A DNA stretch of 64,000 nucleotides from Dendrobates tinctorius (Eukaryota). Shown here one piece after another: positions 37,215 through 42,537 of the stretch (position 1 is the first letter of the stretch; each line of letters opens with the position of its first letter). The translations under genes and the position numbers were made by a program. The notes under the pieces are model-generated. The model saw only the letters and a list, made by a program, of their open reading frames with translations. It was not told the DNA's origin and did no database searches. Where the stretch lies: the NCBI RefSeq assembly GCF_039654945.1, contig NW_027361766.1, positions 28,582,001 to 28,646,000 of the forward strand, written 5' to 3'.

Positions 37215-40120
37215 TAATACACATGTGAGAAATAATTGATTAATCAACAAAAAACTAGCTCACCATTGAGACCAAGAGAGGACGCACATGGCTTCAGCCA
37301 TCTTGTAAGTGTTTAGGCATGCGTATGTTTAGTAAAGTTGGTCACAGTGTTTGAGACACATAAACAGCAGAGGAGAGTTCCACGGTGCATGCGCAAAAAA
37401 GCGATGGTCAACGCATGCATCATTACAACAGACAATGCCAGTGGAGTCCGTCACATAGGCTGAATGCGGGTGCGCAAGCCAAATCCCATGGCGCTTGTGC
37501 AAACAGCAATGTGCAACACGTACAAATATATACACTGAGCTAAATAAAGATAGCCACGCTGCTGTTTAAACAAGGTGCATATAAAAAGGAAATCGCGATA
37601 GCAGAGGTAAAGTGGTTTTGAATGTGCACGAAGCCATGCGCGTGTGCACATGAGTGATGCTCAGCACCCGCGTCATTGTACCACCCGCATTTTAGTATAA
37701 TTATTCCCCAAGCTAAACATGTGCATGCGCTGGAGATCATAGTTCAGACAGGGAAAGAAGCACACAAAGGATAGTCAAATAATCTTAAGTGCACAGGCTA
37801 CAATGCATTTAAGAAGATAATTGTCTGTGCTTGCGTTGTTTTGCAATATAGATGGACGTGCAAAAATAGGCTGAAAAATGGCGCATACAAGCTTGCCATT
37901 AGATAGACTCACAACACACACATCAAATTGCCAATCCTGAAAAAGATGTGTACTTTCAGGAATGTTATAGAAAAAAGCATAAGTAACTTTGAAAACCGAC
38001 TTGGGTTAGAGAAGGTAGTCAAATCAATTGTATAATGTTCTGACCATCTCAAAGTTCATAAATGAAAAATATCTTATTGGCAAGGGGGGATCTACGATGA
38101 TTAGCTATGTGGCCAAATGTGCCCAAAAAAACAGACGTACCACTAAAGAAAACCCTTATAATACAGACAGTCATCAATGACAGAAAATCACTTTATTGAT
38201 TGATTATCACGCCCATATACAAGAGGAAGGTGAGATACATATTTACCAAGGACAAAAGCACAAAATGTGTTAAAACAACAGGGATTTATGATGCTATAGC
38301 AACCCCCCCAAAAAAAAGATAGTCCATATATGCACAAAGGCATGCAGGAAGAATAGATTTTAGGGGGATAATTCTGGTAAAATATCATAGGAAAAAGGAC
38401 AGATGATGATGTGGTATAATTAAAGAGCTATAAAAGCCAATAAACTGCAGTTATCCATCCCCCCCAAAAAAGGGAAGACCATGATTCAAAATCAAAAGTC
38501 CGTGACAAATTATAATACTGAAGAAGTCTAAACAATATGTGTATAGTGGTCATACCATCTCAAAGAAGAATTTTTTCTCCCCCTAGTCTGTAGTGGCTAG
38601 CCAACTAAGAATATAGCAGTTAAACCATAATTTAGTGTGTAAGTGGATCCTGAAAGCCATAAAGAGAGCTTGAAAATTATGCCCAGAAGCGATATGCGAC
38701 ATATAAGGTATCTTTCTTGAAAACCCCCTAAGAAACCTTAAGAAACGCAATGTGCACAAAGGTGCAACAAATATGGTGCTATAAATAGCCTCGCAACACA
38801 CACCTGCAATAAATCAAAACCAGTGTCTGAGTTGTGAGGAAAGACCTAGAACAATGTGAACACACCAAAGGGCAGTTGATTTCCCAGAAAAATAGCATAT
38901 GGTGCTGCAGATAGCAAGAGTAACCATTTATAAAAGACTAAGAAGATGTAAACACATGAACAAGTCATGAAAAGTCCAAGGCATTACAACTCGAACGATT
39001 GAAAGTTAATGTCCCGCAAAGAAGTCCTCCCTTCAAGTTCAGGTTTGACGAATTGTTCAGTGTGGTTTAAACTTGCTTCCATGAAGATGGTGTCATAAAA
39101 TGTCCTTGAAAAGTACCGTAGATAGATGAAAAATCTGGAAGAATGAGAAAGAAAATTTGTCATGGTGAAGAATGCCAGATCAACCATAAAATCCAGAGAA
39201 CAAAATTTTCTCATTAAGTCCTTGCGGGGCCATACTTTTCAAGTTGTAGATCCAACGGGATTCACTACGAAGTAATTCCTTGGTAGGATTACCACCCCGA
39301 ATGCTGCCCTGGACATGGTCCACTATCAGAACCCGCATTCCATGATAACTACTCTCATGTTGTTCAAGAAAATGTGTTGCTAACGATGAAATCGGCTTAC
39401 CCTTGTCACGATCGATCCTGGCTTTACTAATGCTTTACCAATATTTGAAACATGCTGTTGCACTCTACGTCGAACCTCTTGGCTTGTTTGGCCCACATAA
39501 ATTTTTGGACATGGACAGATCAATAAATACACCACATTCCTCGTCCTGCAGTTAGAATAGTGTTTTAATTTAATCAGACTTGGAAAAATGGGAAGGGTGA
39601 CAGTGTCTGATGCAATCATGAGAGGACACACAGAACAACCTCCACATGGAAAGGAGCCTATCAGCCGATGGCTCGTGCCTGTTCTAAAAGTTGGTCTCAT
39701 AAAGTTACCAGTGGTAAGATGATCTTTCAAATTTTTTGCTTTCCTTGCAATCATTTTGGGAGTCTCAGATAAGAAAGGTTGCAATTTAGATTCACTAAGC
39801 AAAATTTCCCAGTGTCCGTTCAAAATCTCCTGTACCTCATGCCATTGGTTATTATAAAGCGTGATTAAATTGATAGTACATTTTGTGTAACGGACCCTGG
39901 GGTGCAAAAGCATTGATCTATCACTGGTTCAAGATGCCTCAAAAGCCTTGGAGATAACTCTGCGTGGGTAACCCCTTTCCACAAACCGGTTAGTCAAGTC
40001 CTTTGCCCCTTCTTTAAAGTCAAGTTCTGTGCTACAATTGCATCTTACCCTCTGGAATTGGCCCTTGGGGATGTTGTTCCAAGATGTTGAGGGTGAAAGC
40101 TTTAAAAATGAAGCAGACTG

Positions 40121-41896
40121 GAGGATTTATAGAGTCTTCATTCAGGGGAGTCGTTTGGGGAGGTGGACTCATATAAAGAATACAGGAGTGATTTCTCTGA
40201 TGATAAAGTCTCGGAGGTGACCTCATCCTCACACCCTTCTTCTGAGGGAGACACCAGACGGGAGACAACCACCTCATTGTTAGACACTATACCTGCCTCA
40301 GACAACTATCCAACAGAAAGTTTTTTAGCCAGGTTGTATGGAGCTTTTTTGGAATCATTGGCTATTCCTACTGACAATCTTATAATACAGGGAAAATCCA
40401 TCAAACAACAAACTGACTCTAAGGCACCTGAAATTTTTGTCAAAAATCTTTTTAAAGACACTTTGCTGCAATTAACGAATGACTCGTACCCAAACTCTAT
40501 TAAGGGATCTGATAATGTTATTACTAACGTAAAAACACCTGACCCTTTCAAAAATCATGAGAATCTGTATTCAGTGCATCCTCAGAAACTTCCCACACTC
40601 TCTGATTCCCTGGATAAATTACAAAACGACATTATCACCTTTAAAGATTCCCTGGCTAATTTTGAGGACTATAAGCGGAAAAACAACCTAAAGATAAGGG
40701 GAATCCCTGAGTCAGTGATGCCTTCAAAATTAAAAGAATATAGCTCCTTGATGGCTTCCCATATGATCCCAAATCTTAGGGAACCCAACTTGATTGAAAA
40801 GGCCTTCAGGATACGCAGGCCACCCTCTTTACCACAAAATGTGAGTTGAGATGTTATAGTCTCATTTTACCCCAATTTGGTAAGGAATACTCTTTTGGGG
40901 TTGTCAAGGAATCCTCTTCTCCTACAGTCCCCGTATAGCCACCTCATGTTCTTCAAGGACCTGTCTAAAACCACCTTACTAAAGCGCAAATCGTTTCATT
41001 CGATAACCCGCGAACTCTTGCACAGGGGAATTTCCTACAACTGGACTCAATTTTCCACTCTGCAAGTGAAATACGCATCTAAAATAATATCTGTTTCCTC
41101 TCCGGAAGAAGGACTTGATTTTTTGAACTCTGCCGGAATAACTTTTCCTGGGACCACTCCTGGACATCATTCGCCGCCTAAATCAGATCTCCATCCAAAC
41201 TGAGCGGCTTGGACTTTACGACAATCTTGTTCTTGGCTTCTTTTTTCCTTTTTTCTTCTTAATTCTTATTTTGGAACCATTGTGTTTGAACATCTATACT
41301 CTACTTTATGGCTTTTAATGAACTGTACTCTGCCTCCACAAGGTCTTAGGGTCACACTGTATTGCACCTGGACACGACAGGTCTGCATATATTTGTTAAG
41401 TGTTAGCTATTTTGTGTAGTTTTGTGATTTTATTCATGTACTAATACTTTTTCCCTTTTAGGTGCGGAAAATAAGTAACTTATGCATACACTGATTACTG
41501 TTTTATACCTGCTGTTACTTGACATAATAACGCCAGTAATAAGTAACTTTGTTTTTTATTATAACTTACTACCTTCTCAGACTGAAGATTAGTGACGTAT
41601 CATGTGTACTGTCATTTTTCTTTTTCATTTGCAGATACTGGCTTTAGTAATAGGCTACTTTTAATAGACCTGGGGTGTAGAAAGCTACACATGTATTCTA
41701 TGTAACTCATGGTTATGTACATGTATGTACAGTATGCCTATCTTTCCCCTATCTTTATAGCGGTATTCTTTTATTTCTTTCCCTATCCCTTCTTTCCTTT
41801 TTTTACCTCCCTATTATCCTATTTTCCTACCGTGTCCCTTATATTTTACCCACACCCTATTAAAATTTTAAAATACCAATAAAGATCATTGGAAAG
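40121..41896 (+). mobile_element. ORF1-only L1-derived insertion (HAL1-like), 17-bp TSD
   Basis: aaaaatgaagcagactg at 40104-40120 and 41897-41913; TTT/AAAA target site; AATAAA at 41878-41883; no ORF2 visible. Confidence 0.85.
40163..41203 (+). pseudogene. L1 ORF1p (coiled coil, RRM, CTD) with one in-frame stop
   Basis: FEDYKRKNNLKIRGIPE, IEKAFRI, S*DVIV and FKDLS...KRKSF motifs; the two listed ORFs are in the same frame. Confidence 0.88.
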
Positions 41897-42537
41897 AAAA
41901 ATGAAGCAGACTGTTCATAGCGGTAGCTTTGCGGTAGAGTTTAGTCTGGATCTGAGTGCCTATCTTCATGATTTTGAGATCCAGAAAATCCACTGCTTCA
42001 TATGAAAGGGAAGCTGTCAAGGAAATGTTTAATGAATTGTTATTGAGCTGGGCCACATACGCTAGGCACTCATCCTTTGTACCTTTCCAAAAAACAAGGA
42101 CGTCATCTATATACCGATACCAATGAAAGACTTTGGTACAAAAGGTAGATGATGGGCGCACCTGTGTCTCCTCCCATCACTCCAATAAAAGGGTGGCATA
42201 ACAGGGTGCACAGCATGCCCCCATGGCGGTCCCAGAGATTTGTTTGTAGAAAACACGGTCAAAAACAAAATAGCTATTAGACAATGCAAAATGTAATAAA
42301 TCTAATAGGAATAAGTGATGTCTGCGATCACCTGTTATCTGTTGGTTCAAGAAGTACGAAACTGCTTCTAATCCATGCGAATGGCCAATAGAGGTGTACA
42401 AGGATTCAACATCCATAGTTACAAGGATGGTGTCCTGTGGTAGAGATAGATCCTGCAGTAGTCGAATCAGGTGGGAGGTGTCCTGAATAAATGAATCCAA
42501 TGCAAAAACAAAAGGCTGTAAGAAATGGTCCAAATAT

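What the first reader, a model, noticed from the sequence alone, without database searches (positions are those of the whole stretch)
40104..41913. ORF1-only L1-derived retroelement (half-L1) with its own 3' UTR, poly(A) signal and 17-bp TSD
Seen: a 1776-bp insert at a TTT/AAAA site contains an L1 ORF1p frame broken only by one TGA (at an R-D-V-I-like position, consistent with CGA>TGA). About 690 bp of T-rich non-coding sequence, AATAAA and a short A-rich end follow, with no endonuclease or RT sequence. Established: ordinary L1 truncation keeps the ORF2 3' end and loses ORF1; ORF1-only HAL1 families are best known from mammals. Inference: a non-autonomous HAL1-like family in this genome, mobilised in trans by L1 ORF2p.
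Basis: partly seen in the sequence, partly recalled or inferred. Interest (0 to 1): 0.72.

Follow-up and report, generated by a model that had tools for sequence, protein, structure and literature searches.

The report
Frog ORF1-only half-L1 retroposon copy
This 1.8-kb insert is a dead, front-truncated copy of a poison-frog jumping-gene family that keeps only the RNA-binding gene of an L1 element and has no copying enzyme, so it is a frog counterpart of the mammalian "half-L1" (HAL1) and probably borrows that enzyme from complete L1 elements.

Summary
Window 40121-41896 is a 1776-bp retroposed insert with an exact 17-bp target-site duplication. It sits inside a decayed Penelope-like element.

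Its reading frame (40133-41200, one TGA) encodes the helix, RRM and C-terminal domain of an L1-type ORF1 protein. After it come 693 nt of T-rich non-coding sequence and AATAAA. There is no endonuclease or reverse-transcriptase sequence.

It is not a one-off. Two independent full-length relatives in Ranitomeya imitator (2.5-2.6 kb, intact ORFs of 625 and 673 aa, own duplications) have the same ORF1-only layout and the same 3'-terminal box. Both end there without ORF2.

The three ORFs form a 100/100 clade inside frog L1 ORF1 diversity. dN/dS between the two intact copies is 0.18 in the RRM-CTD module.

The window copy is 5'-truncated, with no start codon or 5' UTR, so it was dead on arrival. Mobilisation by L1 ORF2p is inferred only: no partner L1 was identified and no second copy of the window's own subfamily could be fetched.

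Verdict: a new member of a known kind (ORF1-present non-autonomous LINEs).

The scan noted likely relatives before on other DNA of this genome. One is s1-377147, not followed up. There are also the followed-up Tx1-like ORF1-only families.

The parts
40104..40120 (+). Left copy of the 17-bp target-site duplication (AAAAATGAAGCAGACTG), at a TTT|AAAAA site
   Evidence: exactly two matches in the window, 0 expected; the empty site restores the host Penelope-like RT frame.
40121..41896 (+). The retroposed insert (1776 bp): a 5'-truncated ORF1-only L1 derivative
   Evidence: There is no other copy in the window.
40133..40612 (+). Poorly conserved N-terminal part of the ORF (about 160 codons). It has no start codon and is preceded by an in-frame TAG at 40130-40132. 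It corresponds to the C-terminal end of the long S/T/P-rich region of the full-length ORFs.
   Evidence: it aligns only weakly to the L001/L003 ORFs.
40613..40846 (+). Short pre-RRM helix and first half of the RRM (..KRKNNLKIRGIPES..)
   Evidence: A profile built from 18 non-dendrobatid frog homologs scores it E 1e-19 at profile positions 3-80. It is 36-38% identical to the ORF1 of full-length frog L1s.
40847..40849 (+). In-frame TGA, at the position of a nearly invariant arginine (PRD[IV]I motif)
40850..41203 (+). Second half of the RRM plus the C-terminal domain, ending in stop codon TGA at 41201-41203
   Evidence: HMMER search against 1.84 billion cluster representatives: P0001 E 9e-19, 45% identity. 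Profile E 1e-28 at positions 83-198, collinear with the first piece. tblastn to the ORF1 part of an L1-carrying Pseudophryne gene model, E 5e-15.
41204..41896 (+). 693-nt T-rich 3' UTR with no endonuclease or RT similarity
41852..41896 (+). Conserved 3'-terminal box (CT-rich tract, then ..TTAAA..TTTAAAATACCAATAAA..TTGGAAAG), including AATAAA at 41878-41883. It is shared with both R. imitator elements.
   Evidence: (a 14-mer found once in the window, 0.08 expected, exactly at the terminus).
41897..41913 (+). Right copy of the target-site duplication
39380..40103 (-). Host element, 3' part: decayed Penelope-like element with a GIY-YIG endonuclease ORF (39380-39913)
   Evidence: Pfam GIY-YIG E 1.7e-4, just below the curated cut-off (22.2 vs 22.6 bits).
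41914..42533 (-). Host element, RT part (YIDD box), interrupted by the insert. The element continues upstream beyond 42533.

Best explanation
The insert is a dead-on-arrival, 5'-truncated copy of a dendrobatid-frog family of non-autonomous retroposons derived from L1.

A full-length member, as seen in R. imitator, is 2.5-2.6 kb and has four parts:
- a conserved ~145-nt 5' UTR starting G(A)GGGGCGTGGCTTGC;
- one ORF of 625-673 codons, made of a long S/T/P-rich region predicted to be disordered, a 25-residue helix, an RRM and a CTD (an L1-type ORF1p);
- a ~445-nt 3' UTR (693 nt in the window copy) ending in a conserved box with AATAAA;
- almost no A tail.
There is no ORF2.

Inferred mechanism: the element's RNA is bound by its own ORF1p and is copied into TT/AAAA-type nicks by the endonuclease/reverse transcriptase (ORF2p) of an autonomous L1. 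This gives 14-19-bp duplications and, as in this copy, 5' truncation.

Shown here: the anatomy, the exact insertion, the ORF1p identity, the absence of ORF2, the shared 3' end in three independent insertions, a monophyletic clade, and purifying selection on the ORF.

Inferred only: the 5' UTR acting as a promoter, the cis role of ORF1p, and the L1 ORF2p source.
For: Insertion: exact TSD and restored empty site.

ORF1p identity:
- A 22-row profile hits human and mouse L1 ORF1p (2ykp E 1.2e-23; 2ldy 1e-21; 2w7a RRM; 2jrb CTD).
- An independent profile without the dendrobatid rows scores the two window pieces E 1e-19 and 1e-28, collinearly.
- The AF2 model of the R. imitator homolog P0001:430-625 has pLDDT 92. 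Its 10 best Foldseek matches are all human L1 ORF1p chains (the first nine from the trimer structures 2ykp/2yko/2ykq, then 2ldy), best TM 0.68.

L1 clade:
- The same ORF1 type is followed by L1 ORF2 in Pseudophryne (E 8e-50 to human ORF2p).
- It is also followed by L1 ORF2 in Rana temporaria (intact 1256-aa ORF2) and in three Logan full-length L1 contigs.

Family:
- L001 and L003 are collinear from base 16 to 2480 at 72-80% identity.
- They have different TSDs, the same 5' start and the same 3' box as the window copy.
- No ORF2 similarity in either.

Selection and phylogeny:
- The tree puts window + L001 + L003 together at 100/100.
- Nei-Gojobori dN/dS for L001 vs L003 is 0.18 (bootstrap 0.11-0.30) in the helix-RRM-CTD module and 0.53 in the N-terminal region, with dS 0.5-0.7 and both ORFs intact.
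Against: - Only one copy of the window's own subfamily was seen. It is so far from the R. imitator copies (synonymous sites saturated, pS about 0.78) that outside the ORF core only the ~45-nt terminal box aligns.
- No autonomous L1 sharing its UTRs or 3' box was found. A sequence-only model of the box hits the 3' end of a sampled frog L1 only at E 2.4.
- Genome copy number is unknown.
- A tails of 0-5 nt are unlike classical mammalian L1/HAL1 insertions.
- RefSeq annotates the R. imitator copies as ordinary genes ('mucin-3A-like'), so a host-gene reading is not formally excluded.
Confidence: 0.78

Rival explanations
1. One-off event: a single L1 transcript was polyadenylated prematurely downstream of ORF1, for example in the long inter-ORF spacer, and then retroposed. 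There is no family.
For: Frog L1s do have long (313-448 nt), mostly T-rich inter-ORF spacers in which a cryptic poly(A) signal could lie. Only one copy of this exact subfamily was seen.
Against: Two independent R. imitator insertions, each with its own TSD, end at the homologous terminal box and also lack ORF2. The three form a 100/100 clade. The two R. imitator lineages diverged under purifying selection, which means repeated rounds of retroposition as ORF1-only units.
Confidence: 0.05
2. Processed pseudogene of a domesticated, L1-ORF1-derived host gene (L1TD1-like). The 625-673-aa R. imitator ORFs would be host genes or retrogenes, and the window insert a retrocopy of such an mRNA.
For: RefSeq and ENA model the R. 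imitator copies as genes. The ORFs are intact and under purifying selection. The protein has lost most of the coiled coil and gained a long disordered region, which could reflect a new cellular role. AATAAA plus a TSD is also what a processed pseudogene shows.
Against: Both intact copies are themselves flanked by TSDs and start within about three bases of the same conserved 5' sequence (the exact first base is blurred by overlap with the duplications). Hence each arrived by retroposition of a full-length unit that carries its own 5' end. They lie at unrelated loci on two different sequence records. No intron-bearing parent was seen. The UTR ends are conserved between subfamilies 26% apart, as expected for a self-propagating element.
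Confidence: 0.1
3. Independent, recurrent origin. The window subfamily and the R. imitator subfamily each lost ORF2 separately from related autonomous L1s that share the 3' box, as HAL1s arose several times in mammals.
For: PMC5753468 states that HAL1s originated independently several times in mammals. The 3' UTRs differ in length (693 vs ~445 nt) and are unalignable except for the terminal box. Synonymous sites are saturated between the subfamilies.
Against: They form one 100/100 clade on a long stem, away from all sampled autonomous ORF1s. They share the degenerated coiled-coil segment. No autonomous L1 with this ORF1 type or box was found among 1.84 billion cluster representatives or in the word search.
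Confidence: 0.15
4. Mobilised by a LINE that is not L1 (CR1/L2/RTE type) and that recognises the conserved 3' box rather than a poly(A) tail.
For: The 3' box is conserved across saturated divergence, and there is virtually no A tail in all three copies. That is the pattern of 'stringent' LINE/SINE pairs.
Against: TSDs of 14-19 bp start with A-runs at TT/AAAA-like sites. The ORF1 is of L1 type. Two of the three sampled autonomous frog L1s also end with AATAAA and only a very short A run (L006, L007; L005 carries a longer one). No significant 3' stem-loop was found.
Confidence: 0.05

Closest known systems
Mammalian HAL1 ('half-L1') families (Smit 1999; Bao & Jurka 2010, as cited in PMC5753468, PMC5786205 and PMC4859970)
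   Same: Non-autonomous derivative of the L1 clade that encodes only an ORF1p homolog. It has its own 5' and 3' non-coding ends, L1-type TSDs and target sites, and presumed trans-mobilisation by L1 ORF2p.
   Different: The host is a frog, not a mammal, and the origin is inferred to be independent, because the nearest sampled relatives are frog L1 ORF1s. The ORF is about twice the usual ORF1 length, with a 430-480-aa S/T/P-rich region. Most of the coiled coil is replaced by a segment predicted to be disordered. The A tail is only 0-5 nt. No autonomous counterpart sharing the ends has been identified yet.
Other ORF1-present bipartite non-autonomous LINEs: HeT-A (Jockey clade) and Ag-Sponge (CR1 clade) (PMC5786205)
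   Same: Same logic: a LINE derivative that keeps the gag-like/ORF1 gene, lacks RT, and depends on an autonomous relative.
   Different: Different LINE clade and ORF1 fold type. HeT-A is telomere-specific, whereas these frog copies are dispersed.
Tx1-like ORF1-only, satellite-targeting family reported by this scan in the same genome (s1-376937, s1-377012, s1-386044)
   Same: Same genome and the same ORF1-only concept, under selection according to those notes.
   Different: Those are described as ZCCHC3/Tx1-like and satellite-homing. The element here has an L1-type RRM-CTD ORF1p without zinc knuckles, and it inserts at TT/AAAA sites, here inside a Penelope-like element. I did not re-test those notes.
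L1TD1, the domesticated L1 ORF1-derived gene of mammals (PMC4161310)
   Same: An ORF1p-derived protein without ORF2. The profile also matches the L1TD1 structure 2lr6, weakly (E 0.009).
   Different: L1TD1 is a single-copy syntenic host gene. The frog copies are TSD-flanked, dispersed, and carry conserved transposon-like termini.

Membership tests
HAL1-type element (L1-derived, ORF1-present non-autonomous LINE) | Encodes a homolog of L1 ORF1p (helix/coiled coil + RRM + CTD) | tested here: met
   Profile vs PDB: 2ykp E 1.2e-23, 2ldy 1e-21. Independent profile vs the window pieces: E 1e-19 and 1e-28. The AF2 model of the close relative P0001 matches human ORF1p, TM 0.68. Pfam alone was blank for the broken pieces.
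HAL1-type element (L1-derived, ORF1-present non-autonomous LINE) | No ORF2 (endonuclease/RT) between ORF1 and the 3' end | tested here: met
   tblastn of four frog L1 ORF2 proteins finds nothing in the insert (best E 7.9) and nothing in the L001/L003 elements. ORF lists.
HAL1-type element (L1-derived, ORF1-present non-autonomous LINE) | A family: several independent insertions sharing the same termini | tested here: met
   Three independent insertions with different TSDs share the 3' box: the window, L001, and L003 (= L002). The two full-length ones share the 5' start. Limit: only one copy of the window's own subfamily was seen, and copy number is unknown.
HAL1-type element (L1-derived, ORF1-present non-autonomous LINE) | ORF1 descends from the L1 clade (relatives linked to L1-type ORF2) | tested here: met
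   The ORF1 clade nests among frog ORF1s. Several of those are followed by L1 ORF2.
HAL1-type element (L1-derived, ORF1-present non-autonomous LINE) | 5' and 3' ends shared with an autonomous L1 counterpart (bipartite, internal-deletion origin) | tested here: inconclusive
   No UTR similarity to four sampled frog L1s. The terminal-box model hits an L1 3' end only at E 2.4. No dendrobatid L1 was available to test.
HAL1-type element (L1-derived, ORF1-present non-autonomous LINE) | L1-type integration marks: TSD of about 7-20 bp, TT/AAAA target, 5' truncation, poly(A) tail | tested here: met
   TSDs of 17, 14 and 19 bp at TTT|AAAAA, T18|AAAGG and CCT|GAAAGG. The window copy is 5'-truncated. Exception: A tails are only 0-5 nt.
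HAL1-type element (L1-derived, ORF1-present non-autonomous LINE) | Mobilised in trans by L1 ORF2p | not testable with these tools
   Inferred from the target sites and the L1 ancestry only.
Mammalian HAL1 lineages proper (Repbase HAL1, HAL1b, ...) | Common descent with the mammalian HAL1 copies | not tested
   No HAL1 sequence was at hand. The nearest relatives found are frog L1 ORF1s (28-38% identity) against about 22% to human ORF1p, so I infer an independent origin.
Domesticated ORF1-derived host gene (L1TD1-like) | Single-copy gene at a fixed locus, not flanked by its own TSD | tested here: not met
   Each of the three copies is flanked by its own TSD. The R. imitator copies lie on two different sequence records.
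One-off 3'-truncated L1 (premature polyadenylation) | Homologous copies continue into ORF2 beyond this 3' end | tested here: not met
   Both homologous R. imitator copies stop at the same box, followed directly by their TSDs.

The most novel reading that the evidence does not exclude
Dendrobatid frogs carry an old, still coding, L1-derived ORF1-only lineage that is the first HAL1-type family described outside mammals. Its ORF1p has been remodelled: most of the trimerising coiled coil is replaced by a disordered Ser-rich linker, and there is a 430-480-aa S/T/P-rich N-terminal extension. The ORF is under purifying selection. This suggests either a new way for a non-autonomous element to compete for ORF2p, or an ORF1p-like factor on the way to domestication while it still transposes.
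Probability: 0.3. Interest if true: 0.6.

Novelty: new member of a known kind. Interest (0 to 1): 0.45.

Why it matters
- In the literature I could search, HAL1-type elements are described only from mammals. A frog family with two intact, selected ORFs would show that 'keep ORF1, drop ORF2' is a recurrent strategy of L1 parasites across tetrapods.
- It offers natural intact copies for testing whether an element's own ORF1p raises its access to ORF2p supplied in trans.
- The apparent loss of most of the coiled coil bears on whether ORF1p trimerisation is needed for this.
- Practically, three R. imitator gene models are mis-annotated transposon ORFs: 'mucin-3A-like' XP_069614618.1, an 'uncharacterized protein' (P0045), and CAJ0966905.1.
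- The window copy itself is a dead fragment with no likely function.

Tried and rejected
Blank or uninformative searches:
- Pfam on the two ORF pieces, even at E<=10: no hit.
- phmmer of the pieces against PDB: only noise.
- Word-based protein search with piece 1: none.
- Other copies in the window by blastn/tblastn: none.
- The ESM-Atlas feature search gave only leads (Tnp_22_dsRBD, Baculo_FP_2nd).
- Rfam on 40000-42000: two sub-threshold chance hits.
- The prokaryote-type promoter/terminator scan is irrelevant here.
- The search of earlier findings by sequence was blank, which means nothing.
- Bao & Jurka 2010 (PMC2923044) is not held. One literature query was uninformative and one was malformed.

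Tests that failed:
- DNA similarity between the window insert and the R. imitator elements outside the RRM core and the terminal box: none.
- A conserved 3' stem-loop around AATAAA (CCAAT...ATTGG): not supported; z-scores -0.8, +0.7 and -1.4.
- Homology of the terminal box to the 3' ends of sampled autonomous frog L1s looked suggestive by eye. A sequence-only model gave only E 2.4 at the L007 terminus, ranked 8th, so I do not claim it.
- Similarity of the 3' UTRs to L1 inter-ORF spacers: only chance-level short matches.
- Search for an R. imitator L1 ORF2 to find the partner: no dendrobatid-labelled hit among the 120 listed.

Not done: I did not try to name the window's species, because the tools hide it.

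
Full report
**1. The observation**

The 17-mer AAAAATGAAGCAGACTG occurs exactly twice in the 64-kb window, at 40104-40120 and 41897-41913, with none expected by chance. The 1776 bp between the two copies (40121-41896) are therefore bounded by a perfect target-site duplication.

I joined the flanks with one copy of the duplication in a script. The minus strand then reads a Penelope-like reverse-transcriptase motif (..YRKATAMNSLLHF-SFHPQHL..) straight across the junction. 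A YIDD RT lies upstream and a GIY-YIG ORF downstream (Pfam E 1.7e-4, just under the curated cut-off).

So this is a clean insertion into a decayed Penelope-like element, at a GCTTT|AAAAATG site of the kind cut by L1 endonuclease.

**2. Anatomy of the insert**

- Frame 40133-41200 is open for 356 codons, except for one TGA at 40847-40849. It ends at TGA 41201-41203.
- The internal TGA aligns with an arginine present in all but one of the aligned full-length homologs (PRD[IV]I).
- There is no start codon, and a TAG lies in the same frame 9 nt inside the insert (40130-40132).
- Against full-length relatives the frame covers only about the last 300-310 residues. The copy is therefore 5'-truncated and was non-functional on arrival.
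- After the ORF come 693 nt with 42% T and no ORF over 57 aa.
- AATAAA is at 41878-41883 and the insert ends 13 nt later. The only A run is the five A's of the duplication.
- Four frog L1 ORF2 proteins find nothing in the insert (best E 7.9), and nothing better than E 1e-3 anywhere else in the window.

**3. What the protein is**

Direct searches were blank: Pfam even at E<=10, PDB by phmmer, and a word-based search.

An exhaustive HMMER search of the second ORF piece against 1.84 billion cluster representatives gave 44 hits.
- The best is P0001, a 625-aa Ranitomeya imitator protein annotated 'mucin-3A-like' (E 9e-19, 45% identity).
- The others are 300-420-aa frog proteins. Two of the ten I scanned against Pfam hit Transposase_22 weakly.

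A 22-row alignment of these hits gave clear results.
- It matches human L1 ORF1p (2ykp, E 1.2e-23), the RRM-CTD solution structure 2ldy (1e-21), the RRM alone (2w7a), the mouse CTD (2jrb), and L1TD1 weakly.
- A profile built only from the 18 non-dendrobatid rows scores the two window pieces at E 1e-19 and 1e-28, on adjacent profile positions 3-80 and 83-198.
- AlphaFold2 on P0001:430-625 gave pLDDT 92. Its ten best Foldseek matches are all human L1 ORF1p chains, best TM 0.68.

The ORF is an L1-type ORF1p: a short helix, an RRM and a CTD.

**4. Link to true L1s**

The same ORF1 type is followed by bona fide L1 ORF2 in several frogs:
- In a chimeric Pseudophryne corroboree gene model, the residues after the CTD match human L1 ORF2p at E 8e-50.
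- In Rana temporaria, the ORF1 homolog P0016 is followed by an intact 1256-aa ORF2.
- Three full-length L1 contigs from Logan assemblies show the same arrangement.

The window pieces are 28-38% identical to those ORF1s.

**5. It is a family, not a one-off**

P0001 is a single uninterrupted ORF in R. imitator (L001:10001-11878).
- The ORF sits in a 2.47-kb unit (L001:9855-12320) flanked by a 14-bp duplication, AAAGGCATAGTCTA.
- A second R. imitator unit (L003:5859-8463) is flanked by a 19-bp duplication and carries an intact 673-aa ORF. The same locus appears as L002 in another assembly.
- The two units are collinear from base 16 to 2480 at 72-80% identity. They share the 5' start (G)GGGGCGTGGCTTGC...
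- Neither has any ORF2 similarity.

All three copies end in the same way:
- a CT-rich tract;
- then ..TTAAA..TTTAAAATACCAATAAA..TTG(G)AAA..;
- then at most three extra A's;
- then the duplication.

The 14-mer AAAATACCAATAAA occurs once in the window, exactly at the terminus, with 0.08 matches expected.

**6. Phylogeny and selection**

A maximum-likelihood tree of the helix-RRM-CTD module used 21 rows, with the window read through with X at the stop. It puts the window, L001 and L003 in one clade at 100/100 support. The clade sits on a long stem inside frog L1 ORF1 diversity.

Nei-Gojobori estimates for L001 vs L003:

| Region | Codons | dN/dS | Bootstrap range |
|---|---|---|---|
| C-terminal module (helix-RRM-CTD) | 188 | 0.18 | 0.11-0.30 |
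| N-terminal region | 436 | 0.53 | 0.41-0.69 |

dS is 0.5-0.7 and both ORFs are intact. The ORF1-only lineage has therefore been evolving as a coding unit.

Between the window copy and either R. imitator copy, synonymous sites are saturated (pS about 0.78) while pN in the module is 0.34. The window copy thus belongs to a deeply separate subfamily.

**7. An unusual protein**

- The full-length ORFs are about twice the length of ordinary frog ORF1s (338-409 aa). They carry a 430-480-aa S/T/P-rich N-terminal region.
- Autonomous ORF1s have a conserved coiled coil (..R..H.E.KM..). In the same place all three family members have a Ser/Pro-rich, unconserved segment.
- AlphaFold2 on P0001:340-625 predicts that segment as disordered (pLDDT below 50). 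It leaves only a 25-residue helix before the RRM.
- This is a prediction, not a measurement.

**8. Mechanism**

Shown here: the anatomy, the exact insertion, the ORF1p identity, the absence of ORF2, the shared termini and the selection.

Inferred:
- The conserved 5' UTR acts as a promoter.
- The RNA is polyadenylated at its own signal.
- The RNA is bound by its own ORF1p.
- It is reverse-transcribed at TT/AAAA nicks by ORF2p from an autonomous L1.
- The window copy results from incomplete reverse transcription, which gives the 5' truncation.

I could not identify the partner.
- UTRs and spacers of the sampled frog L1s show no real similarity.
- An eye-catching resemblance of the terminal box to two L1 3' ends did not survive a sequence-only model search (E 2.4).
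- No significant 3' hairpin exists.
- Whether the family arose by internal deletion or by polyadenylation in the long inter-ORF spacer (313-448 nt in frog L1s) remains open.

**9. Comparison with the known**

- HAL1 is defined as a non-autonomous L1 derivative encoding only ORF1p, with several independent origins in mammals (PMC5753468).
- HAL1 is grouped with HeT-A and Ag-Sponge as ORF1-present bipartite non-autonomous LINEs (PMC5786205).
- In the literature I could search, HAL1 is described only from mammals, and none of the 18 papers holding the term 'half-L1' concerns a non-mammalian HAL1 by title or abstract. The key paper, Bao & Jurka 2010, is not held.
- I cannot check Repbase or Dfam.
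- The frog family meets the tested defining features, except that sharing of ends with an autonomous L1 was inconclusive.

I file it as a new member of a known kind.

**10. Earlier notes of this scan**

- They told me the genome is a poison frog.
- They report Tx1-like ORF1-only families, already followed up (s1-376937, s1-377012, s1-386044).
- An unfollowed first-reader note describes a 'complete ORF1-only L1 derivative with a greatly extended ORF1' in the same genome (s1-377147). That could be a full-length member of this very family.
- I could not read those sequences, so none of this is used as evidence.

**11. Limits and conduct**

- None of the fetched loci looked human.
- The broken ORF was searched as two pieces, or read through with X in scripts.

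Noticed in passing
window 39380-40103 and 41914 to about 43500, minus strand: The host of the insert is a decayed Penelope-like element (YIDD RT plus a GIY-YIG endonuclease ORF) with several frameshifts and stops. The insert splits the conserved ..NSLLHF|SFHP.. RT motif.
   Followed up: partly
L001:10001-11878; L003:6001-8022; L002 (R. imitator): Three public R. imitator gene models are ORFs of this ORF1-only retroposon, not host genes: XP_069614618.1 'mucin-3A-like', P0045 'uncharacterized protein', and CAJ0966905.1. The last two models are spliced onto neighbouring sequence, which for CAJ0966905.1 is Gypsy gag/protease.
   Followed up: partly
L001:10001-11300 and L003:6001-7400: The long N-terminal region of the full-length ORFs contains two to three copies of a short motif (..E(E)TPPT(A/T)PP..R(S/G)..). 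It evolves faster than the RRM-CTD (dN/dS 0.53 vs 0.18). The segment that replaces the coiled coil is predicted to be disordered.
   Followed up: partly
L004:9338-9785; L005:2207-2519; L006:1983-2307; L007:1330-1773: Frog L1s have long (313-448 nt) inter-ORF spacers, T-rich in three of the four. Two of the three Logan L1 contigs (L006, L007) end with AATAAA and only a very short A run rather than a long poly(A) tail; L005 carries a longer A run.
   Followed up: partly
L004:8858-9140: The ORF1 of the Rana temporaria L1 is interrupted by a ~280-bp insertion with long inverted repeats (MITE-like). The RefSeq model XP_040190604.1 splices it out as if it were an intron.
   Followed up: no
P0005 (Pseudophryne corroboree XP_063819111.1): This 2410-aa gene model is a chimera of KRAB/C2H2 zinc fingers with L1 ORF1, L1 ORF2 fragments and an LTR-type RT fragment.
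   Followed up: partly
L001:12497-12826, plus strand: About 170 bp downstream of the R. imitator L001 element lies a Penelope-like RT fragment (..RYVDDVFIVWKG..). The window copy also sits in a Penelope-like element. This is probably a coincidence in Penelope-rich genomes, but it could be counted in a census.
   Followed up: no
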